Shown one piece after another: positions 10,123-61,409 of a stretch of 64,000 nt of DNA. Both the position numbers and the translations under genes were made by a program. Under the pieces are notes generated by a model. The model ran no database searches. It had not been told where the DNA came from and worked only from the letters and a program-made list of their open reading frames with translations. How positions within the stretch are numbered: position 1 is the first letter of the stretch; the number at the start of each line of letters is the position of its first letter. The DNA lies in IMG/VR virus record IMGVR_UViG_3300022744_000020, positions 124,001 through 188,000 of that record; one strand, given 5' to 3'.

Positions 10123-10175
10123 TGTTAAAACCACATTCCAATTATTTTCAGTCACATATAACCAATGTGAATCGA
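10123..10175 (+). promoter_or_regulatory. Putative phage early promoter, copy 1
   Basis: TGTTAAAACCACATTCCAATTATTTTCAGTCACATATAACCAATGTGAATCGA; 24-mer 10152-10175 is 23/24 identical to 44168-44191; upstream part nearly identical to 44571-44602. Confidence 0.65.
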
Positions 10176-10225
10176 GTACAAATCGTGTATTTGGTCACCA
10201 CCCTCCTGATAGAAGGATTTCCCCC

Positions 10226-13694: not shown

Positions 13695-13706
13695 AGAGAT
13701 ACAACC

Positions 13707-23015: not shown

Positions 23016-23592
23016 TCTCGAAATGAAGCTGTACCCTTCCGGGTTCTTTGGCGTGTCGTCTGTTCCTCAAACCGAGGAGAAGACCGACATGCAAAAGGCC
23101 GCCGAGATTGCCAACGGCAATCTCATCACGCGTGAGGTTTCTCTCACTTCGAGCATTGGGGTCAACGAATACTGGGAGAATTTCAGTGCTCGAAACGATG
23201 TTCGAAAGACTCTGGAGTTCAAAGAAGAGGTCGTTCTCCTCGGCCTGCGACTGATCCCCAACGTGAGTTTCAGTGATTGGGTTGAGATCCAAACCAAGAG
23301 CCCTTACTTCACGGACAACCACGCGCTGTACTTGATTGAGTTGTTCAAAGTCGCCAGGTATCAAACGCGACCAGCGCTGCTTCCTCAAAGTTGGATTGCG
23401 CTGTTGCGTGCGGGAATGGGAACTCCCAAGAAGGTTGATCGAAAGGAAATCTTGGTCAAAGCGTACCATAAGGACTACCGCGGTTTTGCTGACGGTAGCG
23501 AGAAGATGCATGACCTGATCTACTCGATCATCAGCGGCGCGGGGTTCTCTTCACTCCTGACCAACCTGAACATCCTTTACGGACATCGGTAA
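23005..23592 (+). CDS. Hypothetical protein (gp91-like position)
   Basis: 195 aa overlapping the previous stop codon. Confidence 0.55.
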   Translation: MVSDLEMKLYPSGFFGVSSVPQTEEKTDMQKAAEIANGNLITREVSLTSSIGVNEYWENFSARNDVRKTLEFKEEVVLLGLRLIPNVSFSDWVEIQTKSPYFTDNHALYLIELFKVARYQTRPALLPQSWIALLRAGMGTPKKVDRKEILVKAYHKDYRGFADGSEKMHDLIYSIISGAGFSSLLTNLNILYGHR

Positions 23593-23614
23593 TTCAACAA
23601 GCGAGGTTTTTATC

Positions 23615-25048
23615 GTGACTAAACTCTCGGTAAGTCCTCTTGCTTTGGCAATCGAGTCTTGTCAGAACGTAGCGAGCTCGGAGGGAAACTTCCGAGCCGT
23701 CGCCCTGCAAGAAGCCAACGCGAGAAAATCGCTAGAAGGAAGAGCAGCTCACCGGGAATCGGTGGGTTTGCTCTCTTCTATGCACGTCTATTTGACCAAA
23801 CACCCCGCAACGATGGAGGGGGTGGAGTCGCGCTTCATGGCGCACTTAGCTGCAACTAGCTTGATGCTCCCAGCCAAAGCCAAGCCCAGCAAAGCTTTGG
23901 AGTCGTTCGATAAACCCACCGTTGCCCTGGAGGGGATTCTGGATGGGGTTCGTGCCCTTGTTCAAGAAATCGAGGGAAGCATTGCGGGTGCTGCTGAAAA
24001 AATGGCGGATTATGTTCAGGAATCCGGCGAATGTGTGGAAGAGCTTGAGGCCCTTCTGTCGGAAATTTCCTCGTCACTCACGACTGCTCCGCTGGCTGAA
24101 CCTCGGCTCAAGTGTTTAAAGCCAGAAGGTTGGATGTCGAATCTTCTCTACAGCGGTGGTTTCTCCAACGGACTGAAGAAACAGCTTCGTGATCTCAAAG
24201 GGCTCAGTGGTGACTACATGGAGCTGACAAAAAGCAGCTCCGACAAACTACTGAAGTGGTTTGAGGAAAATCGAAGCGAGGGCATGTCTGCGTTCGATTC
24301 TCTCGTGGTCAGCTCGGATGATTTTGTGATTCCTGGTATGTGTGCCGATCCAAAGGTTCTCACCGAGATCAATGAGACCTCGGAGCTGGAACTTAGCCAG
24401 GAAGATCAAATCTTCTCGACGCAAGAGCTTCCTGGTGGTGTGCGTTTCCTGATCAAGTGCTCTCTCGGTCAGTTCTCGTCGATTGATGCGATTGATGAGA
24501 TCTCGAAGGTGACTTATTGGAAGGCAACTTCCAATAGTGAGAAGCTCAAGTTCCTGGAAGAGCAAATCAAACAGGAAGAGCATCAGGACTCGATCGACTG
24601 GATTCGTCAAAACGAAGCTCGTCTCGGAGTCAACGCGCAACTGGCTCTCAGCCTGCACCAGAAACTGCATGAGGAAGAAGACCAAGAGCCTCAAAGACCG
24701 CAAGTTGTCGCAGTGAACAACACTTCGCCAGTTGAGTTCAAGTGCCTGACCCCCGATGAGATTGCGAATGCCTTGGCTGAGGTGAAAACTATCTTGGAGG
24801 GCATTCGTTACTGGACGGACAATTCTCTTCGGGATCGTTGGCGTGCTGGGGGTATGAACCAAATCGTGTCAGAGACCCTGCGCAAGGATCTGGACTCGAC
24901 CGCTTCAAAACACTACATGCGCGCGTTTTGCTTCTCGGTAACTCGTATGTTGCTGAGACAGAACTTTGGTGTTCAGCCCTACGTTCTCAACACGCTTCGC
25001 TCCGTTTTGCTTTACTGCAAGAAAAGTGCGCGACTCCACTACCAATGA
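23615..25048 (+). CDS. Internal head/ejection protein paralog
   Basis: Candidate prohead-protease sites LAIES, ALESF, ALEGI; acidic. Confidence 0.6.
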   Translation: MTKLSVSPLALAIESCQNVASSEGNFRAVALQEANARKSLEGRAAHRESVGLLSSMHVYLTKHPATMEGVESRFMAHLAATSLMLPAKAKPSKALESFDKPTVALEGILDGVRALVQEIEGSIAGAAEKMADYVQESGECVEELEALLSEISSSLTTAPLAEPRLKCLKPEGWMSNLLYSGGFSNGLKKQLRDLKGLSGDYMELTKSSSDKLLKWFEENRSEGMSAFDSLVVSSDDFVIPGMCADPKVLTEINETSELELSQEDQIFSTQELPGGVRFLIKCSLGQFSSIDAIDEISKVTYWKATSNSEKLKFLEEQIKQEEHQDSIDWIRQNEARLGVNAQLALSLHQKLHEEEDQEPQRPQVVAVNNTSPVEFKCLTPDEIANALAEVKTILEGIRYWTDNSLRDRWRAGGMNQIVSETLRKDLDSTASKHYMRAFCFSVTRMLLRQNFGVQPYVLNTLRSVLLYCKKSARLHYQ

Positions 25049-39497: not shown

Positions 39498-40867
39498 TGG
39501 AAGATCTTCCGGAATTTGAGATCGAGCAGAGTCCTCTGTACGACGAGTTCATTGACGTGCAGACGAAGTGCCCGAAGGAGAGTCAAAACACATGGCAAGC
39601 CACGTTCCATTTGGGTCAAACCAACACCGAATATCATCCGATCAGTGTGGAGTCGGTTACTTTCAAGCGCGATTACGCCAGTGGATTTGCAGATGAGGTC
39701 ATGCTTATCTGCATGATCCCTTACGGAAAGTACAGTCAAAAAATCTGGCCGAATCGAGACAAGCTAGAGGTCACACTGACGAAGTATCGCTTGAAGGAAA
39801 ACTCCACTGAAATCGATTGGGATGCCGACGTACAAACTGAGCGGTACGGAGTTAAACTCATTGAAGAGCATCCAATTGCGGATATGGCAGATCACGAGGC
39901 AAAGGACGAGTACGCTCTTGACCTGATGTCTCCGCTGCTGCCGATCAAGTTTCAAATCTTCAACAAGAGCGACGAACGTATTCGACAAATTGAGATCGGT
40001 GGGCCCTGGAGAAAGGTAAAATTGGATGTCTTGATGAAGTTGGTGCTGACTCACGAGTCCGGAAAGCTTCTGATTGACAACAAAAAAATAGTAGAGGGGG
40101 TGCAAATGCACCCCATCGGAAATCCAAAAACGTACGAGCAAGTAATTATCCCCCACGGTCTGAGGTTGGTAGATCTGGCTGGTTGGTTGCATAAAGAGCA
40201 TGGTGTTTATCAAGCAGGGATAGGATCCTACGTTCAAAACAAGAACTGGTACATCTATCCACTCTACGACACTAACGTTTATCCAACGCGGAAGAAGACC
40301 CTGACGCTGGTGTTGTTGCCGAGTAAGAAGTTCAGTGAGCTTGAACGAACCTACATGGTGCGTGGAGATACGGTCAAGATTCTTTGTGTTTCGGATAGAA
40401 ACTTCAAAGGCGACACACAGATGAACGAAGCCATTGACGGTGGTGGTGTTCGCTTTACTGAAGCCGATTCTTTCATGGGGAATTTTGGTGAGACAAAAGG
40501 AAACAAGTTTGTTGTCAATCGAAAGAAAAACAACAATGAGTTCTTGTCGAATCAGAATACGCTGAGTACACCGTATGCTCCGGTGAGTGAGAACAACATC
40601 ACGGCCAATCCCTTTGTTCACTATACCGATCTGGCCAAGAGAAAGGGCGGGTTGCTGAGAACCATTTGGCAAAACAGCGAGCCTCGGCTGCTGGAGCCTG
40701 GGATGGCAGTGAAAATACTTTACATGCATGGTCCTGATGTAAAGCAAGCTTACGGGGTTTTGGTAGTGGCTAACCACATGACGGTAAAGGTCGGTGATGT
40801 TTCAATGAAGAAACACATGACTCATTCGGAACTTTGGTTCTTCACGAACATGAAGATCCGAGAATAA
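39497..40867 (+). CDS. Virion structural protein (phiKZ gp101-like, possible baseplate hub)
   Basis: 456 aa; last gene before the hairpin; hub assignment is tentative. Confidence 0.5.
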   Translation: MEDLPEFEIEQSPLYDEFIDVQTKCPKESQNTWQATFHLGQTNTEYHPISVESVTFKRDYASGFADEVMLICMIPYGKYSQKIWPNRDKLEVTLTKYRLKENSTEIDWDADVQTERYGVKLIEEHPIADMADHEAKDEYALDLMSPLLPIKFQIFNKSDERIRQIEIGGPWRKVKLDVLMKLVLTHESGKLLIDNKKIVEGVQMHPIGNPKTYEQVIIPHGLRLVDLAGWLHKEHGVYQAGIGSYVQNKNWYIYPLYDTNVYPTRKKTLTLVLLPSKKFSELERTYMVRGDTVKILCVSDRNFKGDTQMNEAIDGGGVRFTEADSFMGNFGETKGNKFVVNRKKNNNEFLSNQNTLSTPYAPVSENNITANPFVHYTDLAKRKGGLLRTIWQNSEPRLLEPGMAVKILYMHGPDVKQAYGVLVVANHMTVKVGDVSMKKHMTHSELWFFTNMKIRE

Positions 40868-40874
40868 GTCACGA

Positions 40875-40921
40875 ATACCACCCACCACACAGGTATCAAA
40901 GCCTGTGTGGTGGGTGGTATG
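40875..40921. terminator. Long-stem hairpin between convergent genes (stem + TATG class)
   Basis: ATACCACCCACCACACAGG / CCTGTGTGGTGGGTGGTAT, 19 bp, then G. Confidence 0.8.
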
Positions 40922-40930
40922 TTGGGGCAA

Positions 40931-41593
40931 TTACATCGGCTTGAGCGTGAGATCAAACATGATCGCTTGCTTGGCCTTTTCCAGGACCGTGGCCTGATCC
41001 TGGTTAGCGTCGATCATGACCATTCTCGAGTTTTCTCGCGCCTTCTCACGATAGTACCATTGACGGTACAGTTCGTTCGGAGTGATCTTGTTGCTGAAAT
41101 GCTTGTCATCCAGCGGGGTCTTACCACGGGACTCGGCACGCTGCTTGGAAACCGAAGGAAGAACATCCAGAAACAGAATCAGATCAGGTGTGCAATCGAT
41201 GTAGCCGACAACCTTGTCGACATTTTCGATGAGCTCTTCCTGCTTGCCCATGATGCCCTGGTAGACCTCCATGCTCGGGCGGTAACGATCAGCCACCACG
41301 ATCTTTCCTTGTTGGAGAGCAGGTCGAATAACGGTAGAAGTGGTCTGAATGCGGTCAGCGATGAACAACAGCGTCTGAGCCGACGGGTGCAGTGCGGCTC
41401 CAGTAGCTTCGACTTTGTTTTGACTGATCAGGTCACGAATCTGCGGCACGCACGGCTGAAACAGCCCAACAACTGGACGCACTTGGATTTGCTCCAACCA
41501 GTCTTTGAGTTGTCGGGAGAGCGTTGTCTTGCCAGAGCCGTCGGCCCCTTCGACGACAAAGAAGAAACTGCGGGGTTCGGGTTCTTTATTCAT
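40931..41593 (-). CDS. tmk: Thymidylate (dTMP) kinase
   Basis: VVEGADGSGKTT P-loop, LLFIADR, VVADRY, PDLILFLDV, IDANQ. Confidence 0.92.
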   Translation of the reverse strand: MNKEPEPRSFFFVVEGADGSGKTTLSRQLKDWLEQIQVRPVVGLFQPCVPQIRDLISQNKVEATGAALHPSAQTLLFIADRIQTTSTVIRPALQQGKIVVADRYRPSMEVYQGIMGKQEELIENVDKVVGYIDCTPDLILFLDVLPSVSKQRAESRGKTPLDDKHFSNKITPNELYRQWYYREKARENSRMVMIDANQDQATVLEKAKQAIMFDLTLKPM

Positions 41594-43231: not shown

Positions 43232-43414
43232 TCTGAATACTTCTAAAACGAATTAGAAGGGGCGTAGAAGGCGATAAAATCAAACCAGACTACACTCGTC
43301 GGTACCGGGTATTTTAAATCGCTTAAAAAGGATTTAAGAAATTTTTGGGCATATATCACCTGTGTGGATCGAACTATTTCTGACCGATCTAACACATCCG
43401 AAAAAGGACGACGC

Positions 43415-43729
43415 ATGCTTGAGAAAATCGATAGCGCGGTGATGTACCGCAAATGTGGACAGCCTGGGGAAACCTTCTTTGTCTATCTCCTGGGACCCTT
43501 TGGTTTTATCTATGCCACCTACGAAGGAGAATCCGGAACCGAGCCGGTTCACCCAGAATGTCCTTTGTGGCCTAATCAAACCGATGCCGCCGGGCTGGAA
43601 AGTGCCAAAGCACTGATCAAGAAGTGGTTGGGATTGGACCTTGGAGAAGAAACGAAAAGCGTCGGCCTTTCGAGCCCTCCTGCTTTACCTCGCTCGTACG
43701 CAAGCCTCTTGAGGAGGGAAGTGAGATGA
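43415..43729 (+). CDS. Hypothetical protein
   Basis: Start MLEKID after AAGGA. Confidence 0.55.
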   Translation: MLEKIDSAVMYRKCGQPGETFFVYLLGPFGFIYATYEGESGTEPVHPECPLWPNQTDAAGLESAKALIKKWLGLDLGEETKSVGLSSPPALPRSYASLLRREVR

Positions 43730-44085
43730 TCTTTGACGCACAAGCGGCAATCAATGCACTGATCGACCACCCGTACCATGAGGTAAATGTCGAGGATCTC
43801 CCGACCAGTAACGAAGCCTGGGACGAGCGCATGGCTAGGCGAGAAAAACTCGGGGAGGAGTTCCACGTAGAACTCAACAAAATTCCTCGCAAGGGACTGA
43901 TCTCCATGACTCGAATCCTTCGGCCAGGGATCAAATACAGCGATCGGATACTGGTTAAGTTCGGACGACAATGGCTTCGAAGTCAGTTGACGCGAAGTCT
44001 GTGCTTTCATGGCTACCACAAAGCCTTGGATCATTCCTTGCAGGTCACTCGCGCTTTGCAAAAGCCTCAGGAACAAGAGCACTGA
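43726..44085 (+). CDS. Hypothetical protein
   Basis: Start MIFDAQ, SD GAGGAGG, ATGA overlap with the previous stop. Confidence 0.6.
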   Translation: MIFDAQAAINALIDHPYHEVNVEDLPTSNEAWDERMARREKLGEEFHVELNKIPRKGLISMTRILRPGIKYSDRILVKFGRQWLRSQLTRSLCFHGYHKALDHSLQVTRALQKPQEQEH

Positions 44086-44110
44086 AACACTCGAACAACG
44101 CCGTCAAAAC

Positions 44111-44139
44111 AGGGAGCTTCACGCTCCCTTTTCTTTTTT
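44111..44139 (+). terminator. Rho-independent terminator (U-tract class)
   Basis: AGGGAGC-TTCAC-GCTCCCT + TTTCTTTTTT. Confidence 0.75.
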
Positions 44140-44149
44140 GTTAGCGGAA

Positions 44150-44191
44150 CATTCCAAATTTCTTTAATCACATATAACCAGTGTGAATCGA
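44150..44191 (+). promoter_or_regulatory. Putative phage early promoter, copy 2
   Basis: TCACATATAACCAGTGTGAATCGA (44168-44191), followed by an AAGAC/GTCTT leader hairpin. Confidence 0.65.
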
Positions 44192-44241
44192 AGACAATCA
44201 CGTCTTGCGATAACTCCCGAAAAAGGGAATTAGGAGCCACT

Positions 44242-44523
44242 ATGATCCTCGTCACCACCTTCGCTCGCGTTCTGACTGAGTCTCTCCTGTTCACGAACCG
44301 CGCGGTTCGCGGGATCAGTGAGTACGAGGCCATGACCGAGTTGTGCCACGCTGCACAGCCCGGGGGGCCGGAATCTGTAACGCTGATCGGACTCCGCCCG
44401 GATGATCTGATCCGGGAGGCGGATACGGTATTCACCGAGGTGGAAGGGTTCAGCCCTCACCTCGTGGGATACTCCAAGATCTACCTCAAGCCTGAGGAAG
44501 GTCCTTGGATCGTGCTGTCCTGA
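44242..44523 (+). CDS. Small early-type hypothetical protein
   Basis: 93 aa, SD AGGAG, downstream of the promoter motif. Confidence 0.6.
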   Translation: MILVTTFARVLTESLLFTNRAVRGISEYEAMTELCHAAQPGGPESVTLIGLRPDDLIREADTVFTEVEGFSPHLVGYSKIYLKPEEGPWIVLS

Positions 44524-44570
44524 AAGGGACAGCACGGAAAAGACAGCAGTAGCGTCTTTTCTTTTTATTC

Positions 44571-44623
44571 TGTTAAAACCGCACTCCAATTATTTTCAGT
44601 CATATATCCTCTCCATGAATCGA
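44571..44623 (+). promoter_or_regulatory. Putative phage early promoter, copy 3
   Basis: TGTTAAAACCGCACTCCAATTATTTTCAGTCATATATCCTCTCCATGAATCGA, followed by a GAAGAC/GTCTTC hairpin. Confidence 0.65.
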
Positions 44624-44676
44624 AGACCTATCAGTCTTCTACTACTTTCCCTAACGGATAACCTGAGGAATTCGAG

Positions 44677-44820
44677 ATGTCTGAGCAACAAATCAAAAAG
44701 AAAAGCACCGTCTGGGGTGGGGCCTTCTGTGCTGTGATCGGTGCAGCAATGGTTGCGCTCGCTACCGTGAAGCTGGTGGCTGTCGCCAAAGAAGGATCCT
44801 CCACTAACGAGGCTCAGTAA
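44677..44820 (+). CDS. 47-aa single-pass membrane protein (not in ORF track)
   Basis: MSEQQIKKKSTVWGGAFCAVIGAAMVALATVKLVAVAKEGSSTNEAQ; SD GAGGA. Confidence 0.65.
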   Translation: MSEQQIKKKSTVWGGAFCAVIGAAMVALATVKLVAVAKEGSSTNEAQ

Positions 44821-44875
44821 GCTCTCCGAGCTTTATTACCAATTGATACTCCCGGTCAAGGGAAAGGAATTTGAA

Positions 44876-45025
44876 ATGTTCGGTACTGCTGTGCGTGTTG
44901 TGCTTTGGGGTCTGGTCCTTGTTCAAGGAGCCCAACTGGTCGTTGGTGGTGTTCAAGCGGCTGCAAAGGGCATGAAGCTGCCCGATGAAGAACCCACCCA
45001 AGACGACGAACTCAATCAAGACTGA
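44876..45025 (+). CDS. 49-aa membrane protein with acidic tail
   Basis: MFGTAVRVVLWGLVLVQGAQLVVGGVQAAAKGMKLPDEEPTQDDELNQD; SD AAGGA. Confidence 0.6.
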   Translation: MFGTAVRVVLWGLVLVQGAQLVVGGVQAAAKGMKLPDEEPTQDDELNQD

Positions 45026-45061
45026 CTCTCTACCAACTCACTCCTGAAGAAAGGAACTCTC

Positions 45062-45289
45062 ATGATCCGCAATTCCGCTGTCACCCGTCCTGCAGCACTC
45101 AACCGGAAAAACCGCAAGGCCGCCAAGATCCGCGAGCGCAATACCGACGCCTGGGTCAAGGACCGCAAGGCTACCCGCGCCGCGGTGCTAGCCATCCAGG
45201 CAGCCCGACAAGGCAAGCCCGACAGCCACCCCTTCACCGACTCCGAGATGGAGATCACATCGAAGTACATCAACCAGTGCAAGGCGTAA
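45062..45289 (+). CDS. Small basic protein
   Basis: 75 aa, Arg/Lys/Ala-rich, strong codon bias, SD AAGGA; followed by a hairpin and T run. Confidence 0.65.
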   Translation: MIRNSAVTRPAALNRKNRKAAKIRERNTDAWVKDRKATRAAVLAIQAARQGKPDSHPFTDSEMEITSKYINQCKA

Positions 45290-45889
45290 CAGCCCGCACT
45301 GGTTGGGAAAGAAAGGCTTGGATAGCTTTCTTTTTTGTTAAGATAAAAAACCTCGTTTTTTAAAAGGGTCCCTTCCCCCCTTTCCTCTTTCTCTTTCTCT
45401 TCCTTTCTTCCTCTCTCTTCCTTCTCCTCTTATAGGTTCCCTTTGGAAACCCTCCTTGATCTCCTCAACCATCTCTCTCTATCTATCTATCTCTATCTCT
45501 ATCTCCTTACCCCCCTACCCCCCAAAAGATATAGATAAACAAAGAAAAAAGAAAAATAAACAAAAAGAAAAAAGAGTTCGAACGAAGGTTCGAAAGGGAT
45601 AAAGACCAAGTATTTTCTTATAAGTTATATGTAATGTTGATTAAAATAGATAAAAAAGAAACACATTGTAGGATTTTATTTGTAAAATAAGAATTTGTGA
45701 GTAAAAAGAAAATCATGTCTTAGGCTTTTGGTTTTGTAAGGATGATGGATGTGGTTAGGGTAGGAAATACTAAACTTGTGTGGCCAAGCTCTGCTTGGCT
45801 TAATCCTCAGGAGATCTTGAGTACGCGCGTGGGCGGCGCGTTTTTATGATGTTGATGCATCGAGTAAGATTTTTAAAGGAGAGTAAGCA
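45290..45889. other. Long non-coding region with polypyrimidine then A/purine-rich tracts (candidate origin or structural DNA/RNA)
   Basis: 63-nt pure C/T run 45369-45431, TCTATC-type repeats, CCCCCCTACCCCCC, A-rich tract ~45524-45575, AT-rich block to ~45720. Confidence 0.5.
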
Positions 45890-46263: not shown

Positions 46264-46683
46264 GTGAGTACACTGCTTAACCCAGCCGAGCTGAGTGAGA
46301 TTGCGTTCTTTCACCCGGTGAGCAGCAAGGTATGGCTGATGGATGCCACCGAGCAAGAAAAGGAACATTACCGAAGATTCAAGGCGTGTCCTTGGGGGTG
46401 TGTGAAAAGGCTGTTTCCTTTACCGGACGGACAGCTATCAACCAAACTCATCACAATTAATTCTTTCGGGAGCAAGAATCGATTGGGCATGCACGATTAC
46501 TTGATATTCGGCTACGACAACCACGCATGTCCTCCCGGAGTATTCCGCCCGACGGTAAGCGGCTACGCTGCTGTGGGTAAAAGCACATCCCTGTTAGAAA
46601 TCTGGCGTCACAAACCGTACGCGGTAGAGCAAATGCTCAAAGATCTTGTCTCCGTGCACTATCAAATCTGCCCTGAACTCTGA
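46264..46683 (+). CDS. PWGC-family hypothetical protein, copy 1
   Basis: LLNPAEL...RFKACPWGCVK...IFGYD. Confidence 0.65.
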   Translation: MSTLLNPAELSEIAFFHPVSSKVWLMDATEQEKEHYRRFKACPWGCVKRLFPLPDGQLSTKLITINSFGSKNRLGMHDYLIFGYDNHACPPGVFRPTVSGYAAVGKSTSLLEIWRHKPYAVEQMLKDLVSVHYQICPEL

Positions 46684-46692
46684 GGAAGCACC

Positions 46693-47064
46693 ATGACCTA
46701 CACCCTACTCACCCCGGAAGAACTTCGTGACATTGACTTCTACGTCCCTTCCTTGGAAGATCCTGAATTGAATCCTGCACGACTGAAGTGTGCCGAGAAG
46801 TTCAAGACCAACCCCTGGGGCTGCGTCAAGTTCGTTGACCGCAAGTCCGGAAAGACGAAGTTCTTGTCGGTCGATTCGTTCAGCAGCAAAACCCCTGGCC
46901 GCACCAACGTGGTTGTCTACGGGTTCGAAGAACTGGACGGTCAGTACAACCCGATTGCGTTGGGAATTCTGACCCACGATGCCATTCGCACATTGACTGA
47001 AGTCTGGGAGAAAGATCCTTCTTCGGTTCGGTTCCTGGTGAAGTGCCTCTCGACGCTTTACTGA
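46693..47064 (+). CDS. PWGC-family hypothetical protein, copy 2
   Basis: LLTPEEL...KFKTNPWGCVK...VYGFE. Confidence 0.7.
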   Translation: MTYTLLTPEELRDIDFYVPSLEDPELNPARLKCAEKFKTNPWGCVKFVDRKSGKTKFLSVDSFSSKTPGRTNVVVYGFEELDGQYNPIALGILTHDAIRTLTEVWEKDPSSVRFLVKCLSTLY

Positions 47065-47083
47065 AGCATCCAAGGAGTTAGAC

Positions 47084-47491
47084 GTGCCGCCTAAATTCAT
47101 CAAGCTTCTCACACCGCAAGAAATCCAAGCGATGGGGTTCAATAAAGACAGATCCCATCAGATTCTCCCCGATTTGGCCGCTCATTATCAGCGATTCTCT
47201 ACAAACCCGTGGGGTTGTGCGCTGATCGAGGTGGACGATCGCGGCGTTGTTGGAAACAAGGTAAACAAATATCTCAGCATCGACACAGTTGCACGCGGGG
47301 ACGATGGGGTTCTGCATTGGCTGGTTTACGGTTACGATGACTTTGGATGTCAAGAAGGAGAATATCGCCCCATTACGGTATTGGAAGCACCCGCTTACGC
47401 GGAAATACTTCAGCTCTATCAAGAGCATCCAAAGCTTTTGACGAACCTGTTAGAAACCCTCCATTTGAACCTTGGCCAGATCTTTCTTTGA
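47084..47491 (+). CDS. PWGC-family hypothetical protein, copy 3
   Basis: LLTPQEI...RFSTNPWGCAL...VYGYD. Confidence 0.7.
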   Translation: MPPKFIKLLTPQEIQAMGFNKDRSHQILPDLAAHYQRFSTNPWGCALIEVDDRGVVGNKVNKYLSIDTVARGDDGVLHWLVYGYDDFGCQEGEYRPITVLEAPAYAEILQLYQEHPKLLTNLLETLHLNLGQIFL

Positions 47492-47501
47492 TCGCTCAAT
47501 C

Positions 47502-47864
47502 ATGATTCCTTCCAACTCCCCCATTCTCTTTGGTTCTCTGCTGCGTACGCTGGAGAACATGGATCCTGATGCTGAAATACAGCACCTGGCATTTCCCCAC
47601 AGTTACCGTGGCTACCATGAAGACCTGGCTCTCGAGCTGATTCCGGGTGAGCGCATGCTCGCCAAGAATCTCCATGTGGTTCTGAAAAACTTCTACGCCG
47701 AACTGATCGACGGAGAGATGCCAGGACACAAAGGAGGATCGCATGAATTCTCCTACAAGAGCCGCGTCTGGGTGGTTTACGAAATGGGACAACTTGCGTC
47801 CTATGCTTTTCTGGGGTTCAACCCTGACGGAGACGTGCTTTTCTCGGAGGTTGAGATTAGCTGA
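47502..47864 (+). CDS. Hypothetical phage protein
   Basis: PHSYRGYHEDLALE motif; 120 aa. Confidence 0.6.
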   Translation: MIPSNSPILFGSLLRTLENMDPDAEIQHLAFPHSYRGYHEDLALELIPGERMLAKNLHVVLKNFYAELIDGEMPGHKGGSHEFSYKSRVWVVYEMGQLASYAFLGFNPDGDVLFSEVEIS

Positions 47865-47960
47865 AGAATACCAATCCATCACCAGTAGGAGTCCCCACGA
47901 AAACAAAGAACTAAAATCTTCACCCGTCCTTAAACCAACCGATCCAACAGCGAAACCATC

Positions 47961-49004
47961 ATGACCAATCCGACCACCCCCATTGTATCCACCAACGAAC
48001 GCGTGCACTTCCTTGAAGGCTTTCAAGACATTCTCGCTAATCCTCCGACGACGGGCAGTCTCGTTCGGACCTGGGTTCCGGCCGGCGACAAAAGCGAGAA
48101 CATCGTCGCCCGGTGCAGTAACGGCCTGCTTTTGTCGTTGTCGTTCCTTCATCGAAACGATTTCACGGCGACCATACTGAACCGACCCGAAGACGTCTTG
48201 CCCAAGACGATCTCCGGCTGCGTTCGCCTGATCAGCGTCCAGTATGTGATCGAGGTCAGCTCGTCTGCTGCCGATGAACCACAACTGGTGGCACTGCCGA
48301 CCGCACTCCCCGGACAGGCCGCAGAGGTGTTTGACGAGTACCTGAGTCGAAATGCACATGTGCTCAACCGCGTTGCTTTGGTCGGCCGAATCTTCGAAGT
48401 GATGTTTCACGAATTTGAGACGAATGTCAACTGGGAGGTCAAGAAAAAGAAAGACATTCCGGAACATGTGCTTCCGTGCCTTCCCGAATCCTGGGATCGC
48501 GTGGTGATCATGTACGAGACCCGGCAGGTTGATCCGTTTGCTACAAGTCTTGAAAAGAGGCCCTACTTCCTGCGCTTCTCTTTTCCAGGAATTTTCGGGA
48601 CCCACGTCTGTCGCATCTTGAACGGTCGCCGCATGGAAGAGTTGGTGCAAACCGTCGGCTTTCACCCGCCGCCGAGGGTGAGCACCCTCCAGATCTCGCC
48701 ATTCTGGATTCTGCCCCGCCGCCCGATCCAGTCTCTCACGATCTCCTACGACTCGACTGAAGCGGGGAAGGAGGATTCCGGAATTTGGGTTCAGTCCAAC
48801 GAGCAACCCAAACGGATCAATTTCCATTTCCTGGAGATCCGCGCACCCAAAGAAGTCAACGTCTGGGTGGGAGCGATAGAGGATTACTGGGGAGAGAAAA
48901 TAATCCCGGATGGTCTCTGCTTCGCCCTGCGTAACCCCACGGCGGAAGACTTCACTCAAACTGCCCTCGCTATGGAGATCGACGTCGAAATCAAAGAGGT
49001 TTAA
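47961..49004 (+). CDS. Hypothetical protein
   Basis: 347 aa, codon-biased; the longer antisense ORF is its shadow. Confidence 0.65.
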   Translation: MTNPTTPIVSTNERVHFLEGFQDILANPPTTGSLVRTWVPAGDKSENIVARCSNGLLLSLSFLHRNDFTATILNRPEDVLPKTISGCVRLISVQYVIEVSSSAADEPQLVALPTALPGQAAEVFDEYLSRNAHVLNRVALVGRIFEVMFHEFETNVNWEVKKKKDIPEHVLPCLPESWDRVVIMYETRQVDPFATSLEKRPYFLRFSFPGIFGTHVCRILNGRRMEELVQTVGFHPPPRVSTLQISPFWILPRRPIQSLTISYDSTEAGKEDSGIWVQSNEQPKRINFHFLEIRAPKEVNVWVGAIEDYWGEKIIPDGLCFALRNPTAEDFTQTALAMEIDVEIKEV

Positions 49005-49024
49005 GACCTAGAAAAATTACATAT

Positions 49025-49410
49025 GTTCTGTGGAGGAGTGCGTGCATCTCTTCGATCGCCTTAGTCTGTCTTCATTGAGTCGCCACATGGTTGCGCCGGC
49101 CCTTCATTGGGCGGCCACGGCAGTTACCAATCGCGCCTCGGAGCTACCCATCATCCCGGTTTTCCTGATCGCCGCTCAACGCCTGCCGAATGTCTCCCGG
49201 CGTCGCGTTGTCCGATCGGTATCGGCGCAAAAGCTGATGGACGGCCCAGCCGCATGGTCCAACCTGATCGATGGATTGGCCTTAATCCCGGGAGGGAATT
49301 TGGTCGAAACTTCTTGAGATCGGCGATTCGTGCTCGACAGTCTGACGTTCGGATCTCTGGCGACATTGCCACTAGAGGTTCCGTCGAAGTTCGCTCTCCT
49401 CCACACCCCT
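49025..49410 (+). ncRNA. Putative structured non-coding RNA of unknown family (~380 nt)
   Basis: Nested end-to-end helices: 49030-42/49392-404 (12 of 13 bp), 49050-58/49382-89, 49061-70/49336-45 (9 of 10), 49077-84/49322-29 (8 of 8); internal helices; G-U pairs favour the plus strand; TATG upstream and a 17-bp hairpin downstream. Confidence 0.7.
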
Positions 49411-49417
49411 TTTAAAG

Positions 49418-49464
49418 ACACCCCCAACACTACGTGTAATGCGTAGTGTTGGGGGTGTTGTATG
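49418..49464 (+). terminator. Long-stem hairpin (TATG class) after the putative ncRNA
   Basis: ACACCCCCAACACTACG / CGTAGTGTTGGGGGTGT, 17 bp, then TGTATG. Confidence 0.8.
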
Positions 49465-49562
49465 TTCGACCTTATTTATTTACAAGGTTAAGACATAAAA
49501 GTGGATGACTCAAGCCTTACTTCCATTTAACGAGTTGTCCCATCAAGAAAAGGATCCTACAC

Positions 49563-49949
49563 ATGAGCACCGTCAATATCGCTGGTCTGGACAAAGCTGA
49601 ACTCCTGATGCGCGCCTTCAACGCATCCAAACAACAAGGTCTCGGCCTGGCTGACCCGCTCGGTCGGCAAGACATGACGATCGATCAGGCTCGCGCCATC
49701 GCCACGCAGGGACCAATGGTGTATGACTACCTGCACGGTCGAGTCTTGAAGATCGATATCTCTGGCAATGAGGTCCGAACGTACGCGTACAACCGCGACG
49801 TTGGTCTGGGCGCATTGGAAAAGATCGTCGATGACATGCGCTCTGGTGTCGTGGCCCCTCCGCCGAAACTCGATCGTGAACCTCTCGAGTTCGATGCCGA
49901 GAAGTTCGCCCGCGAAAACCCCATCGAGATCCGGCCTCTGTGGAAATAA
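49563..49949 (+). CDS. Hypothetical protein, paralog of 15482-15844
   Basis: IAGLDKAELL...YDYLHGRVLKIDISG; strong codon bias. Confidence 0.7.
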   Translation: MSTVNIAGLDKAELLMRAFNASKQQGLGLADPLGRQDMTIDQARAIATQGPMVYDYLHGRVLKIDISGNEVRTYAYNRDVGLGALEKIVDDMRSGVVAPPPKLDREPLEFDAEKFARENPIEIRPLWK

Positions 49950-50047: not shown

Positions 50048-50091
50048 ACGCCCTTAGCACTCTTGTGCTAAGGGCGTCTTTTTATTTTTTT
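50048..50091 (+). terminator. Rho-independent terminator (U-tract class)
   Basis: ACGCCCTTAGCAC / GTGCTAAGGGCGT + CTTTTTATTTTTTT. Confidence 0.8.
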
Positions 50092-50108
50092 GTCAAATAA
50101 AACATAGC

Positions 50109-50130
50109 CATATATCATCCAGGTAGTAGA
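50109..50130 (+). promoter_or_regulatory. Putative early promoter, divergent copy
   Basis: CATATAT-9nt-AGTAGA, one base shorter than the other copies. Confidence 0.4.
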
Positions 50131-50164
50131 GAACCCAAGAACAATTTAAGTCTAACCAAACAAC

Positions 50165-50842
50165 ATGCCACCCCTCCTGACTTTCCTAAAGAAATCCATC
50201 ATTGCTCTGCACCGACTCCATCAGGATGGCGTTTGGGATTGGGAGCAAAAGGTCATTCCCCCCGAGCATCCTTCCGGATTATTGCAAGAACAGATCCACA
50301 CGAAGCTATTGCTGAGAATGGCGGAGCTGATCAAGGAGAAGGTTGATTGTACCTCCTGCGTCTACCAAATGCTCTCAGAGCACGACTCTAGTCGTCTGGG
50401 GGTAGCAGACTACTCAGAGATTGAAAAATGCCTTGGTCGTCGTTTAAAGAAACCTGAAAATGGGCGATCTGGAGATTTTACGTTTCACCACCGAATAGAC
50501 TTATTCGTTGTAGCGAATGAATCTCGAACGATTGACCCCTACGAATTCCAGCAGTCGGCAAAGCGGTCAATCGATGTCATCAATGCCGCCCTGGCGAGAT
50601 TGGCCCAACCGATCCCATGGCTGTCCTTGACCCAGACGTTGAAGTTCAAGCAGTATCGACCTAAAGGGCCTCAAAATCCATTCGAGCTGTACTACGAGTT
50701 GTTTTTTAGCGGGGTCATCCTAGACCCTGGCCTTTCTGAAGCCAAGGCCGATGAGCTTCGTAGAACCATGATCCGTGCAGGTCACGGCGATTTGAAGGTA
50801 CCAACCTATACGGGTGGTTGGTTAGACCTTCGAGATCTTTAA
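50165..50842 (+). CDS. Hypothetical protein
   Basis: 225-aa ORF at the head of an operon. Confidence 0.6.
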   Translation: MPPLLTFLKKSIIALHRLHQDGVWDWEQKVIPPEHPSGLLQEQIHTKLLLRMAELIKEKVDCTSCVYQMLSEHDSSRLGVADYSEIEKCLGRRLKKPENGRSGDFTFHHRIDLFVVANESRTIDPYEFQQSAKRSIDVINAALARLAQPIPWLSLTQTLKFKQYRPKGPQNPFELYYELFFSGVILDPGLSEAKADELRRTMIRAGHGDLKVPTYTGGWLDLRDL

Positions 50843-59220: not shown

Positions 59221-59252
59221 CAGAGTCCAAGCCGTAATCGGCTTGGACTCTG
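59221..59252 (+). terminator. Hairpin terminator
   Basis: CAGAGTCCAAGCCG-TAAT-CGGCTTGGACTCTG, 14 bp. Confidence 0.75.
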
Positions 59253-59267
59253 TATCTATTTTATTTT

Positions 59268-59293
59268 GGTCATATATACTCCCACTGAGTAGA
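59268..59293 (+). promoter_or_regulatory. Putative early promoter, copy 4
   Basis: GGTCATATATACTCCCACTGAGTAGA, followed by an AGAGC/GCTCT hairpin. Confidence 0.55.
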
Positions 59294-59336
59294 GCTAATT
59301 CGCTCTTACCGAGAACCCTCCTGTTAAGGAATTGAT

Positions 59337-59843
59337 ATGGCACGAGTAGAATGGTGGTTTGGGCGACCTGTGTTTTTCGGCGATCACGTGCGCAACGCAT
59401 ATTGCGGAAACGCAAGATTGATGGGTGAAGATTTCGGAGTCCCGGCCCTGAAGGAAATTTCCTCAGTTTGGGACCAATTCAAAGCCCCTGACTTCATGAA
59501 CTTCTTAGAGGAGATCTATGTTTTCATTGGCAAGAATCTCGAGGAGAAGCTTTCCCCGAATCAGCTCTATGCGGCAATCGCTCATGAGCTAGGACATTAC
59601 GAGTTCAGGCACTGCTTTAAACCCCCTAGGGATATGTCAGAGCGTCTGGCCCAGGAAATGGAGGCTGATCAATTCGCCATTTCTTTAGGTGCCGACCCCG
59701 AAAGCTTACTGGAAGTGATCGCTCTGATAAACGCGGAAGAGATTAAAGAGCTTTCAAAGACCAAGACTCCAGCCGAGATCGGCAAAATCTTGGACCAACA
59801 TTACAAGGACATGGGTCCCAGATACTTGGCTTTGTCCAAGTAA
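59337..59843 (+). CDS. Small M48-like zinc metallopeptidase
   Basis: AAIAHELGHYEFRH and EMEADQFAISLG; no TM segment. Confidence 0.75.
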   Translation: MARVEWWFGRPVFFGDHVRNAYCGNARLMGEDFGVPALKEISSVWDQFKAPDFMNFLEEIYVFIGKNLEEKLSPNQLYAAIAHELGHYEFRHCFKPPRDMSERLAQEMEADQFAISLGADPESLLEVIALINAEEIKELSKTKTPAEIGKILDQHYKDMGPRYLALSK

Positions 59844-60407: not shown

Positions 60408-60657
60408 AAACATCAGACTGCAAATGGCAACCTCCTTCCCGGAAGTTACGGTGGAGGTGCGCAAAGATCACAATCTCATCTGTATCCATTGTGACGATTC
60501 GAGGGTCATCCCGCGATTGAGTCGGCAATTGGTTTACTTGCTTACAGGTACTGGTTATAACGCTAGCAATTACTGCGTCTTCCCAAACCTTTTGAGCCAG
60601 TCTCGGAAAGTGACTTACCGTTTGACCAAGACCCCACAGGGTCAAAAATCAAAATGA
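60385..60657 (+). CDS. Hypothetical protein
   Basis: Start MLSLAQIE; followed by hairpin AACTACTGG/CCAGTAGTT. Confidence 0.5.
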   Translation: MLSLAQIENIRLQMATSFPEVTVEVRKDHNLICIHCDDSRVIPRLSRQLVYLLTGTGYNASNYCVFPNLLSQSRKVTYRLTKTPQGQKSK

Positions 60658-60737
60658 TTTAACTACTGGGGCCAAAAGCTCCAGTAGTTAAATATGTTTT
60701 TTGTTCTATCGAATAGTACAACACCAGAGCACCGAAG

Positions 60738-61409
60738 ATGATCTTCATTTATCGCATCGAACATTGGAAGACTTCGACCGATCCGAGGTCTTTTGAAGCG
60801 GAACACAAAGCTAGAAGGTGCCTGAGTTCTGAGTATTTCGACCTGGGTCCTCGAACGAAAGAGTTCTTTAAAAAGCCCAGTAAGCGAATTAAAATCGGGT
60901 ACAAGTCACTCGACTACCTCAAGGGTCTGATCGTGGACCAGACGGGCTTTGAGAGGGCGGGGTTGGTCATTCGGGGGTATTATTTAAACCCAGTCCTCGC
61001 TGAAGACCAGATGGTTTTGTTCAGTAGCATCAAGGCTGATCAAACAAAGGACATGTGGCCATGCCGGCCTTCGGTCATGAACAAACACAAACCTTTTCCA
61101 ATCGCTGAAAAGGTTTATTGCGGTCGCCCGAGTATTTGGGGAAACCCATTCCCGGTAGAGTCCGCACCGCTGAATATCAAGAGCGCTAGAGACTGGAGCT
61201 GCGATGAATTCGATGCGTACCTGGTAAAGAATCAGACTTTAATTAATCGAGCAAGACTTAAGCTTCGCAACCTAAGTCCAGAATGTTGGTGTTTTCCGGC
61301 CAGGTGCCATTGCAATACGCTGCTTCGTGTAGCCAATTGCCGGGCGTTTATTCCCAATTTGTTTCTAAGGCTGCTTCCAGAAAATTCTGACGATACATTG
61401 TCAGAATGA
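60738..61409 (+). CDS. DUF4326-like domain protein with extra N-terminal domain
   Basis: VYCGRPSIWGNPF and ECWCFPARCHCNTL in the C-terminal half. Confidence 0.65.
   Translation: MIFIYRIEHWKTSTDPRSFEAEHKARRCLSSEYFDLGPRTKEFFKKPSKRIKIGYKSLDYLKGLIVDQTGFERAGLVIRGYYLNPVLAEDQMVLFSSIKADQTKDMWPCRPSVMNKHKPFPIAEKVYCGRPSIWGNPFPVESAPLNIKSARDWSCDEFDAYLVKNQTLINRARLKLRNLSPECWCFPARCHCNTLLRVANCRAFIPNLFLRLLPENSDDTLSE

What the first reader, a model, noticed from the sequence alone, without database searches (positions are those of the whole stretch)
49025..49410. Unknown ~380-nt structured RNA gene in a jumbo phage
Seen: the two ends pair as nested helices. GTGGAGGAGTGCG (49030-42) pairs with CGCTCTCCTCCAC (49392-404). 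CTTCGA-CG (49050-58) pairs with CGTCGAAG (49382-89). TTAGTCTGTC (49061-70) pairs with GACAGTCTGA (49336-45). GAGTCGCC (49077-84) pairs with GGCGATTC (49322-29). A side hairpin at ~49353-79 makes a three-way junction. Internally, TTGCGCCG/CGGCGCAA (49091-98/49223-30) crosses CTCCCGG/CCGGGAG (49194-200/49288-94), a potential pseudoknot. CGGCAG/CTGCCG (49118-23/49183-88) adds another helix. G-U pairs work only on the plus strand. It is flanked by AAAAATTAC-ATATG upstream and a 17-bp terminator hairpin downstream. Established: TATG is the phiKZ late-promoter core and AAanntTAC the middle-promoter consensus. Inference: a stand-alone RNA gene. Its size and topology loosely recall tmRNA, and one frame reads ...PVFLIAA (but then CAA, not a stop). 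It lacks tmRNA, RNase P, SRP and group I signatures, so it may be a new family or a highly diverged tmRNA derivative.
Basis: partly seen in the sequence, partly recalled or inferred. Interest (0 to 1): 0.85.

Follow-up and report, generated by a model that had tools for sequence, protein, structure and literature searches.

The report
Orphan structured RNA gene in jumbo phage
A roughly 385-base stretch between two genes of an uncultivated phiKZ-like giant phage is conserved as a folded RNA rather than as a protein, matches no known RNA family, and has an unknown function.

Summary

The window comes from a 270-kb phiKZ-like (Chimalliviridae-type) metagenomic phage. I found the same locus in three other assemblies: one identical, one 97.7% identical, one about 73% identical.

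Evidence for an RNA rather than a protein:
- Flanking genes change mainly at third codon positions; this stretch shows no such periodicity.
- Both ORFs are broken in the divergent copy by 1-nt indels and stops.
- Changed base pairs stay paired more often than the local substitution spectrum predicts (27 of 41, null 19.5, P = 0.007). Eight of 10 double changes are compensatory.
- G-U pairs make the fold plus-strand specific.

It is not a known family:
- A 94-nt central arm is 94% conserved while the terminal rod is 62-70% identical and covaries.
- Rfam (4227 families) and ARAGORN find nothing, so tmRNA, RNase P and group I are rejected.

Caveats:
- Only three distinct sequences exist.
- The shuffle z-score (-3.2) is unremarkable for this genome.
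- The pseudoknot cannot be tested, and one proposed helix is not conserved.
- Transcription and function are inferred.

Best guess: an independently transcribed scaffold or decoy RNA in the accessory-gene block.

The parts
49012..49025 (+). Promoter-like motif AAAAATTACATATG. It contains CATATGT (49020-49026) and TATG (49022-49025).
   Evidence: GA.AAATTACATATGTTCTGTGGAGGA is identical in all copies, although the two bases at 49009-49010 just upstream and the 49011-49013 purine differ in L002. It resembles a recurrent intergenic motif, a T-rich tract followed by CATATAT(C/A), at 43350, 44601, 50109 and 59271. The phiKZ late promoter is TATG with the start at G (PMC4666361). Function is inferred.
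49025..49409 (+). Body of the structured RNA, about 385 nt. The 5' end is assumed at the G of TATG. The mature 3' end may include the downstream hairpin, giving about 435 nt.
   Evidence: RNAalifold consensus of three distinct sequences: 124 pairs, 8 with two-sided compensatory change. Independent MFE folds of the window and L002 share 99 of about 130 pairs. Substitutions show no codon periodicity. The core (49076-49330) is 60% G+C, against 47-58% for 2-kb windows across the 64 kb.
49029..49042 (+). P1, 5' strand. It pairs with 49392-49405.
   Evidence: I2. Three pairs change on both sides in L002 and stay paired (GC to AU, CG to UA, GC to UG), and the window's U-U mismatch becomes C-G.
49392..49405 (+). 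P1, 3' strand.
   Evidence: As for the P1 5' strand.
49050..49056 (+). P2, 5' strand. It pairs with 49383-49389.
   Evidence: Invariant in all copies. Present in both independent folds.
49058..49070 (+). P3, 5' strand. It pairs with 49336-49348.
   Evidence: Two two-sided compensatory changes (AU to GC, GC to AU) and a G-U to A-U change in L005. The distal part is partly broken in L002.
49076..49084 (+). P4, 5' strand. It pairs with 49322-49330 and closes the core.
   Evidence: U-A to A-U compensatory change and G-U to G-C in L002.
49089..49112 (+). P5 5' strand (49089-97, pairing with 49256-64) and the small hairpin P6 (49099-49112).
Evidence: GGUUG/CAACC and GCCC/GGGC are invariant.
49113..49147 (+). 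Variable segment, including the base of the long arm (P7, 49133-45 pairing with 49243-53).
   Evidence: 9-nt deletion and many substitutions in L002. Pairing is only partly kept: one compensatory change, four broken pairs.
49148..49240 (+). Near-invariant long arm P8-P11, with the 9-nt apical loop AAUGUCUCC at 49189-49197.
   Evidence: 88 of 94 aligned columns are identical between the window and L002. The 5' part scores 76 of 123 and the 3' part 119 of 169. Invariant blocks: 49174-49201 and 49203-49237.
49266..49321 (+). Arm P12, with the GNRA-type loop GGGA at 49290-49293.
   Evidence: Eight one-sided changes in L002 keep pairing (G-C, G-U and A-U interchanges). The loop and its closing stem are invariant.
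49351..49381 (+). Side hairpin P13 (loop ACAU, 49363-66). It forms a three-way junction with P2 and P3.
   Evidence: Three one-sided changes in L002 and L005 keep pairing. The apical 16 nt are invariant.
49418..49458 (+). Perfect 17-bp hairpin, loop UGUAAUG, followed by UGUAUGUU. It is the likely terminator or 3'-end hairpin.
   Evidence: I1. Three two-sided compensatory changes (two in L002, one in L005) and no disruptive change. It was not scored by the T-run terminator scan.

Best explanation
This is a real gene-sized, non-coding, structured RNA element expressed from the plus strand of an uncultivated phiKZ-like jumbo phage. It founds a new, very narrowly distributed RNA family.

Anatomy (shown by comparison):
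- A rod of about 40 bp, P1-P4, interrupted by bulges, pairs the two ends. It covaries freely, so its role is structural.
- A side hairpin makes a three-way junction on the rod.
- The rod closes a core of about 245 nt built from a small hairpin, a long arm that is almost invariant (49148-49240), and a second arm capped by a GGGA loop.

Expression (inferred): the RNA is made from its own phage-type promoter (CATATGT/TATG, start near 49025-49030). It ends at or after the covarying 17-bp hairpin, giving a discrete RNA of about 385-435 nt within a block of small ORFan genes that each carry their own promoter-like and terminator-like signals.

Mechanism (inferred, about one chance in three):
- The rod locks and protects the ends.
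- The invariant loops pack against each other. Candidate contacts are 49189-94 with 49362-67, and 49194-200 with 49288-94.
- The fixed-sequence core serves as a specific binding surface for a protein, either a host factor that it sequesters or a phage partner. The RNA would then act as a scaffold or decoy ribonucleoprotein during infection.
For: Context:
- The phage is Chimalliviridae-like: a 974-aa virion protein matches 290 phiKZ-like phages at 37% identity or less.
- The locus recurs in an independent assembly, identical (L021), in L005 (97.7%) and in L002 (about 73%).

Non-coding:
- Substitutions by codon position are 53/29/102 and 26/20/60 in the flanking genes, but 21/17/26 and 30/25/23 in the two ORF frames of the element.
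- L002 carries frame-breaking 1-nt indels and stops, and no gene was called there.
- ORF95 has no homolog apart from its own 90%-identity cluster, which comes only from these same loci (window, L021, L005). ORF95 and ORF102 have no Pfam, PHROG or significant tblastn match.

Structure:
- Independent folds share 99 pairs.
- 27 of 41 changed pairs stay paired, against 19.5 +/- 2.9 expected (P = 0.007). 8 of 10 double changes are compensatory (P = 0.03).
- All three L005 changes that fall in pairs are G-U to A-U switches.
- z = -3.2 for the window and -4.0 for L002 on the plus strand, against -0.7 and -2.8 on the minus strand.

Constraint:
- Against L005 the element is 97.7% identical while four flanking genes average 88% (P = 6e-11).
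- The central arm is 94% identical to L002; the rest of the RNA is 62-70%.

Signals:
- The promoter-like motif is conserved, and similar motifs recur upstream of neighbouring genes.
- The downstream hairpin has three compensatory changes.
Against: - Only three distinct sequences exist, and two of them are 98% alike. The covariation statistics are significant but thin, and the most conserved helices carry no information.
- The thermodynamic z-score is ordinary for this genome.
- No transcript data exist, so neither the 5' nor the 3' end is mapped. There is no terminator between the upstream 347-aa gene and the element, so it could be made as that gene's 3' UTR.
- The promoter analogy is by resemblance only. 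The exact AAANNTTACNTATG motif is unique in the window.
- Nothing identifies a partner. The upstream ORFan gave a low-confidence model (pLDDT 42). The downstream 128-aa protein has a confident model but no informative structural match.
- The scaffold/decoy mechanism is a default reading of the conservation pattern, not a tested one.
Confidence: 0.65

Rival explanations
1. It is a cis-acting part of an mRNA rather than a separate gene. Either it is a structured 3' UTR of the upstream 347-aa gene, stabilising or localising that message, or it is a long leader or attenuator controlling the downstream 128-aa gene through the 17-bp hairpin.
For: Only 20 nt and no terminator separate the upstream stop codon (49004) from the element. 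The order RNA, hairpin, gene looks like a leader-attenuator layout. The 347-aa gene, the RNA and the 128-aa gene occur together in all copies.
Against: - The spacer carries a perfectly conserved promoter-like motif.
- The hairpin is a perfect 17-bp stem with no conserved competing anti-terminator. The upstream ACACCCC repeat does not follow the hairpin's compensatory change in L005.
- A second conserved TATG follows the hairpin and could serve the downstream gene.
- Distant homologs of the 128-aa gene in other phages have no such RNA upstream.
- The whole 4-kb block is syntenic, so co-occurrence says little.
Confidence: 0.2
2. It encodes a small protein: the 95-aa GTG ORF at 49030-49317, the 102-aa TTG ORF at 49107-49415, or a product read through a stop.
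For: Both ORFs exist. Gene callers called a 91-aa and a 76-aa product on the two closest assemblies.
Against: - No third-position excess among substitutions.
- In L002 a 1-nt deletion, a 9-nt deletion and a 1-nt insertion shift the frames, each frame has early stops, and no gene was called.
- The conserved core is invariant at all three codon positions.
- No homologs beyond the ORF95 cluster from these same loci, and no Pfam or PHROG match or significant tblastn hit for either piece.
- No Shine-Dalgarno sequence or ATG start.
Confidence: 0.03
3. It is a DNA-level element: a miniature inverted-repeat transposable element, an origin, or a recombination site whose inverted repeats only look like RNA helices.
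For: 14-nt terminal inverted repeats. The surrounding region is mosaic, with kilobase indels between the window and L005.
Against: - It is single copy in 64 kb and absent from every other locus scanned.
- It sits at the same site in all relatives, with no target-site duplication.
- The nested pairing extends about 40 bp beyond the terminal repeat.
- Many pairs are G-U and work only on the plus strand. One-sided changes are those that keep RNA pairs.
Confidence: 0.04
4. It is a highly diverged member of a known RNA class (tmRNA, RNase P RNA, 6S RNA, a group I intron, or a large ornate RNA such as GOLLD or ROOL) that current models miss.
For: The size and the paired ends recall tmRNA, RNase P and 6S RNA. 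Phages are known to carry tmRNA-like and large ornate RNAs.
Against: - No Rfam family reaches its gathering score in the window. None matches the element at E <= 10 in either divergent copy; the only hits fall on the downstream hairpin or beyond it.
- ARAGORN finds no tmRNA.
- There is no T-arm next to the 3' strand, the 3' tail is ACCCC or ACCCA rather than ACCA, and there is no tag frame ending in a stop.
- No gene is interrupted, which argues against an intron.
Confidence: 0.03
5. It is a chance fold in ordinary intergenic DNA kept similar only by recent common ancestry.
For: The z-score is not exceptional for this genome, and only three distinct sequences exist.
Against: - Conservation comes in blocks: 94% in the core arm against 62-70% elsewhere in the RNA, 63% in the spacer downstream of the hairpin, and 73-82% in the flanking genes.
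- There is an excess of pair-preserving and compensatory changes.
- It is more conserved than the flanking genes in the close pair.
Confidence: 0.05

Closest known systems
tmRNA (SsrA), including phage-encoded and permuted forms
   Same: The length is about 360-400 nt. The 5' and 3' ends pair with each other and enclose a multi-helix body, possibly with pseudoknots.
   Different: - There is no tRNA-like domain: no T-arm or T-loop, and the 3' tail is ACCCC or ACCCA.
- There is no tag reading frame ending in a stop.
- ARAGORN and the Rfam tmRNA models find nothing.
- The end-to-end pairing is a rod of about 40 bp rather than a 7-bp acceptor stem plus P2.
Large ornate RNAs of unknown function found in phages and prophages (GOLLD, ROOL; bioRxiv 10.1101/2024.12.08.627333)
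   Same: It is a large, intricately folded non-coding RNA carried by phage genomes and recognised only by comparative analysis, with no known function. Its invariant hairpin loops could make RNA-RNA contacts.
   Different: It is about 385 nt, against roughly 500-800 nt from my recollection of the original descriptions. There is no Rfam match and no tRNA genes nearby. Oligomerisation is untested. The distribution is a single small phage clade.
6S RNA
   Same: It has a long closing helix formed by the two ends. It is a plausible decoy for a host protein in a phage that, like phiKZ, likely does not need host RNA polymerase.
   Different: 6S RNA is about 180 nt, a single rod with a central bubble. 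Here the rod closes a branched core of about 245 nt, and there is no Rfam 6S hit.
Small RNAs mapped in chimalliviruses 201phi2-1 and phiKZ by ONT-cappable-seq (PMC11512511)
   Same: They are non-coding transcripts of nucleus-forming jumbo phages, some of them intergenic and bounded by a phage promoter and a terminator.
   Different: Those are under 250 nt and mostly 5'-UTR-derived premature termination products. blastn of this element against 50,697 phage records, phiKZ-like phages included, finds nothing.
phi29 packaging RNA (pRNA)
   Same: It is a phage-encoded, protein-binding, structured RNA whose loops pair intermolecularly.
   Different: pRNA is about 170 nt and belongs to a different phage group, and it is in Rfam with no match here. 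Nothing links this RNA to packaging.

Membership tests
tmRNA | A tRNA-like domain: a 7-bp acceptor stem, an adjacent T-arm with a GUUCRANYC-type loop, and a 3' (A)CCA. | tested here: not met
   ARAGORN finds no tmRNA or tRNA in 64 kb. The 3' strand of P1 is preceded by the P2 strand, not by a hairpin. The tail is ACCCC in the window and ACCCA in L002.
tmRNA | An internal tag reading frame that ends in a stop codon. | tested here: not met
   The frame reading ...PVFLIAA continues with Q-R-L-P... for another 45 codons. That frame is shifted in L002.
tmRNA, RNase P RNA, 6S RNA, group I/II introns, GOLLD, ROOL, OLE, HEARO, pRNA and all other Rfam 15 families | A match to the family covariance model. 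| tested here: not met
   Nothing reaches a gathering score in the window. No match on the element at E <= 10 in the window or in L002. All weak hits lie outside the RNA body: in both copies on the downstream hairpin (microRNA models, plus RT-11 in the window), and in the window one further 3' (snoR22, 49475-49551).
Group I intron | It interrupts a gene whose exons join into one reading frame. | tested here: not met
   The upstream gene ends with TAA at 49002-49004 and is full length in its homologs. The downstream gene is a complete member of a 21-protein family that starts at its own ATG.
Type III antitoxin RNA (ToxI-like) | Tandem direct repeats of about 36 nt, upstream of a terminator and a toxin gene. 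| tested here: not met
   The element contains no tandem repeat family, only scattered 8-17-nt two-copy matches. The downstream protein has no match to known folds.
Miniature inverted-repeat or insertion element | Multiple copies, target-site duplication, and presence/absence polymorphism. | tested here: not met
   It is single copy. The flanks TTCT and ACCC are not a duplication. It is present at the same site in all four assemblies.
Protein-coding gene | An open frame conserved in relatives, with substitutions concentrated at third codon positions. | tested here: not met
   (21/17/26 against 53/29/102 in the neighbouring gene; stops in L002).
Structured non-coding RNA (generic) | Base pairs maintained by compensatory and pair-preserving substitutions, specific to one strand. 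| tested here: met
   27 of 41 changed pairs kept (P = 0.007), 8 of 10 double changes compensatory, and 128 standard pairs on the plus strand against 112 on the minus strand. The sample is small, with three distinct sequences.
Independent transcription unit of a phiKZ-like phage | A mapped transcription start at a phage promoter and a mapped 3' end. | not testable with these tools
   Only sequence resemblance is available: conserved CATATGT/TATG (PMC4666361) and a covarying hairpin.

The most novel reading that the evidence does not exclude
A previously unseen class of large, tertiary-folded RNA made by a nucleus-forming jumbo phage from its accessory-gene region. Its invariant 170-nt core would be either catalytic or the specific trap or scaffold for a host factor, for example a defence or RNA-metabolism protein. 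That would give chimalliviruses an RNA-based takeover or counter-defence tool.
Probability: 0.15. Interest if true: 0.8.

Novelty: categorically new. Interest (0 to 1): 0.5.

Why it matters
Structured non-coding RNAs longer than 300 nt are rare, and those studied so far have proved to be ribozymes, ribonucleoprotein cores or self-assembling particles. Chimalliviruses separate transcription, inside a protein nucleus, from translation, and they are exposed mainly to RNA-targeting defences. A large phage-made RNA with a sequence-invariant core is therefore a plausible player in host takeover, RNA traffic or counter-defence. If transcription is confirmed, the RNA is small enough to make in vitro and to test directly by probing, cryo-EM and pull-downs.

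"Categorically new" here means only that it shows no detectable relation to any described RNA family. Its function is unknown, it occurs in one small uncultivated clade, and the family has three distinct sequences. It may prove to be a lineage-specific regulator of modest importance.

Tried and rejected
**Homolog hunting**
- blastn and megablast against 50,697 phage records: no match.
- Eight viral-contig scans, two genome-contig scans and one metagenome-contig scan: only the source contig plus chance k-mer hits. The covariance model or nhmmer rejected L010-L013, L017-L020 and L022.
- Profile search of the upstream ORFan against 1.84 billion proteins: only its one known relative.
- A covariance model of the core (R1) finds nothing else in the window, in 100 kb of Burkholderia phage FLC9 or in 50 kb of Xanthomonas phage RTH11 around the syntenic virion genes.
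- A full-length model could not be calibrated within the time limit.

**Partner and context clues**
- AlphaFold model of the 347-aa neighbour: too poor to use.
- The 128-aa neighbour: a confident model, but no PDB match and only uncharacterised viral matches.
- A possible general pairing of the 128-aa family with an upstream RNA was rejected. Other members are preceded by an HTH-like extension, an HNH remnant with a sigma-70 promoter, or unrelated sequence.

**Other ideas dropped**
- Complementarity of P2 to an ATCGAAGA leader motif: that heptamer is common in coding sequence.
- An anti-terminator switch using the ACACCCC repeat: it does not co-vary.
- A CsrA-type sponge: by eye, GGA motifs are not clearly enriched.
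- IS110 bridge RNA or TnpB omega RNA: the neighbouring protein has no transposase or RuvC family match.

Full report
**Source and context.** The window is part of IMG/VR contig IMGVR_UViG_3300022744_000020, 270,383 bp. A 974-aa virion protein at 16887-19811 (minus strand) matches 290 phiKZ-like phages of Pseudomonas, Erwinia, Ralstonia, Burkholderia and Xanthomonas, at no more than 37% identity. Other structural proteins fall in phiKZ-type PHROGs. "Jumbo phage of the Chimalliviridae type" is therefore correct, but no cultured phage is close. The element lies in a block of small ORFans with almost no Pfam or PHROG match (one neighbour hits a function-unknown PHROG).

**Check of the observation.** So are the upstream AAAAATTACATATG (49012-49025), the perfect 17-bp hairpin (49418-34 / 49442-58) and the ...PVFLIAAQ... 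frame.
- The plus strand folds to -153.7 kcal/mol (z = -3.23, 0 of 100 shuffles as good). The minus strand gives z = -0.67.
- I calibrated the z-score against the genome. 386-nt windows taken every 300 nt have mean z = -1.3, sd 1.55, and at least a dozen of 214 lie below -4.2. The folding energy alone is not remarkable.

**Relatives.** DNA searches of the phage collection found nothing. I reached relatives through the flanking genes instead.
- The 347-aa upstream ORFan has one 80%-identical homolog, on a 4.3-kb Logan contig (L002).
- The 128-aa downstream gene led to an 8.1-kb JGI contig (L005).
- The cluster of the spurious ORF product led to an independent ENA assembly of the same phage (L021).
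- All are syntenic. In the element, L021 is identical, L005 is 97.7% identical and L002 is about 73% identical.
- No further member turned up in eight IMG/VR scans, two scans of 185,579 species' genomes, one metagenome scan, a 1.84-billion-protein profile search with the neighbouring ORFan, or covariance-model scans of 150 kb of the nearest cultured phages.

**Coding or RNA.**
- Between the window and L002, the flanking genes change mostly at third codon positions (53/29/102 and 26/20/60). The element shows no periodicity in either ORF frame (21/17/26 and 30/25/23).
- L002 has a 1-nt deletion, a 9-nt deletion and a 1-nt insertion. Every frame has early stops, and no gene was called there.
- ORF95 has no homolog apart from its own cluster, which comes only from these same loci. 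Neither ORF piece has a Pfam or PHROG match or a significant tblastn hit.
- The protein-coding reading is rejected.

**Structure.**
- The window and L002 fold independently into the same architecture. 99 of about 130 pairs fall in the same alignment columns.
- RNAalifold on the three distinct sequences gives 124 pairs, 8 with two-sided compensatory change.
- I took the pairs from the window's fold alone and resampled L002's substitutions from the local substitution spectrum. 27 of 41 changed pairs remain standard pairs, against 19.5 +/- 2.9 expected (P = 0.007). 8 of 10 double changes are compensatory (P = 0.03).
- All three L005 changes that fall in pairs are G-U to A-U switches.
- 16 of 128 pairs are G-U and would be A-C mismatches on the other strand.
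- L002 gives z = -4.0 on the plus strand and -2.8 on the minus strand.
- This is real but thin evidence. The sample is three sequences, and the best-conserved helices never vary.

**Anatomy** (window coordinates).
- P1 (49029-42 / 49392-405), P2 (49050-56 / 49383-89), P3 (49058-70 / 49336-48) and P4 (49076-84 / 49322-30) form a rod of about 40 bp that joins the ends.
- P13 (49351-81) branches off between P2 and P3.
- Inside P4 lie:
  - P5 (49089-97 / 49256-64), which encloses a small hairpin P6, a variable segment (49113-47) and a long arm P8-P11 (49148-49240) with the loop AAUGUCUCC;
  - a second arm P12 (49266-49321) with a GGGA loop.
- Against L002 the long arm is 94% identical. The 5' part is 62% and the 3' part 70%.
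- The compensatory changes concentrate in the rod (P1, P3, P4), with two more at the base of the long arm (P7, P8). The one-sided pair-preserving changes fall mainly in P12 and P13.
- The rod therefore behaves as pure structure, while the core is fixed in sequence.

**Long-range contacts.**
It competes with the invariant P5.
- The CTCCCGG/CCGGGAG pseudoknot is invariant, so it cannot be tested.
- The other half of the same loop (AAUGUC, 49189-94) is complementary to GACAUU at the tip of P13 (I7). This too is invariant.

**Expression signals.**
- GA.AAATTACATATGTTCTGTGGAGGA is identical in all copies.
- In phiKZ the late promoter is TATG with the start at G. The AAanTTACc motif of middle promoters is centred near -24 (PMC4666361). 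Here the two motifs abut, so the phiKZ middle-promoter analogy does not fit, and the combined motif is unique in the window.
- The window does have a recurrent intergenic signal: a T-rich tract then CATATAT(C/A), at 43350, 44601, 50109 and 59271, often just after a terminator-like hairpin. This agrees with the rule that each RNAP-encoding jumbo phage has its own AT-rich early-promoter motif near -10 (PMC7598289). The element's CATATGT matches that signal at 6 of 7 positions.
- The downstream hairpin has three two-sided compensatory changes and none that disrupt it. It is followed by a second conserved TATG.
- A separate transcript of 385-435 nt is therefore plausible but not shown. Read-through from the upstream gene is not excluded.

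**Comparison with known families.**
- Nothing in the window reaches a gathering score in Rfam 15. No family matches the element at E <= 10 in the window or L002. All weak hits lie outside the RNA body, on the downstream hairpin or further 3'.
- ARAGORN finds no tmRNA or tRNA.
- The tmRNA idea fails on the T-arm, the 3' end and the tag frame.
- The intron, type III antitoxin, MITE and IS-associated guide-RNA readings each fail a defining feature (see the membership table).
- The small RNAs mapped in 201phi2-1 and phiKZ are under 250 nt and mostly 5'-UTR products (PMC11512511). blastn of this element against the phage collection, which includes phiKZ-like phages, finds no match.
- The nearest analogues in kind are the large ornate RNAs of phages and prophages, GOLLD and ROOL (bioRxiv 10.1101/2024.12.08.627333). 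There is no sequence or model similarity to them.

**Mechanism.**
- Shown: an RNA-level, plus-strand-specific constraint, with a covarying terminal rod and a sequence-invariant core.
- Inferred: own promoter, discrete transcript, compact tertiary fold through loop-loop contacts, and a role as a specific protein-binding scaffold or decoy.
- I give about 0.65 to [quoted passage not shown]. Within that, roughly one chance in three goes to the scaffold/decoy mechanism. The rest is split among a cis-acting UTR role, an RNA-RNA function, catalysis and self-assembly.

**Verdict.** This is a new, orphan RNA family with a very narrow known distribution and no experimental handle yet. Interest is moderate (0.5): large structured RNAs are rare and the host phage group is of current interest, but the comparative sample is tiny and the function is open.

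Noticed in passing
window 43310-43380, 44110-44245, 44526-44680, 50048-50165, 59230-59340: There is a recurrent intergenic cassette: a terminator-like hairpin with a T-run, a T-rich tract, then CATATAT(C/A) (CATATAA at 44171). Two of the copies are followed by a shared leader, GTG/ATGAATCGAAGAC..GTCTT, that can form a small hairpin. This is probably the phage's own early-type promoter class with a conserved 5' leader.
   Followed up: partly
window 45370-45720: A pyrimidine-only low-complexity tract of about 160 nt (CT-rich, with TCTA repeats) is followed directly by an A-rich purine tract and very AT-rich sequence. No ORF is present. It might be an origin-like or divergent regulatory region.
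   Followed up: no
window 43372-45062 and 46319-47529, compared with L005: Two segments of 1.7 kb and 1.2 kb are present in the window but absent or replaced in the roughly 90%-identical relative L005. This shows that the accessory block is mosaic. A repeat of about 70 nt links 10125-10191, 44149-44229 and L005:2017-2107.
   Followed up: partly
window 49563-49949 (128-aa gene): This gene belongs to a small protein family (conserved NIAGLDKAELLAALYN...FDYLHGRV.K.D...YNRD.G) scattered among unrelated phages and prophages, with 21 hits at up to 80% identity. The AlphaFold model is confident (pLDDT 90) but has no PDB match. In one contig (L007) a homolog sits next to an Acb2/Tad1-hairpin (anti-defence sponge) gene.
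   Followed up: partly
window, upstream of many start codons (e.g. 47961, 50165, 56604, 59973, 12173 minus strand): Many genes have no GGAGG-type Shine-Dalgarno sequence. They are preceded instead by C/A-rich strings such as CCAACCAAC, AACCATC or CAACCACC directly before the ATG.
   Followed up: no
window 44401-44786, 40801-41186, 13501-13886, 23401-23786, 60601-60986: These 386-nt plus-strand windows had the most negative folding z-scores in the window (-5.2 to -5.7 with 16 shuffles), stronger than the element under study. Some include terminator hairpins. None was examined for conservation.
   Followed up: no
window 47496-48959 (minus strand) and others: Long shadow ORFs lie opposite real genes (for example 487 aa opposite the 347-aa gene). 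A naive longest-ORF annotation picks the wrong strand here.
   Followed up: partly
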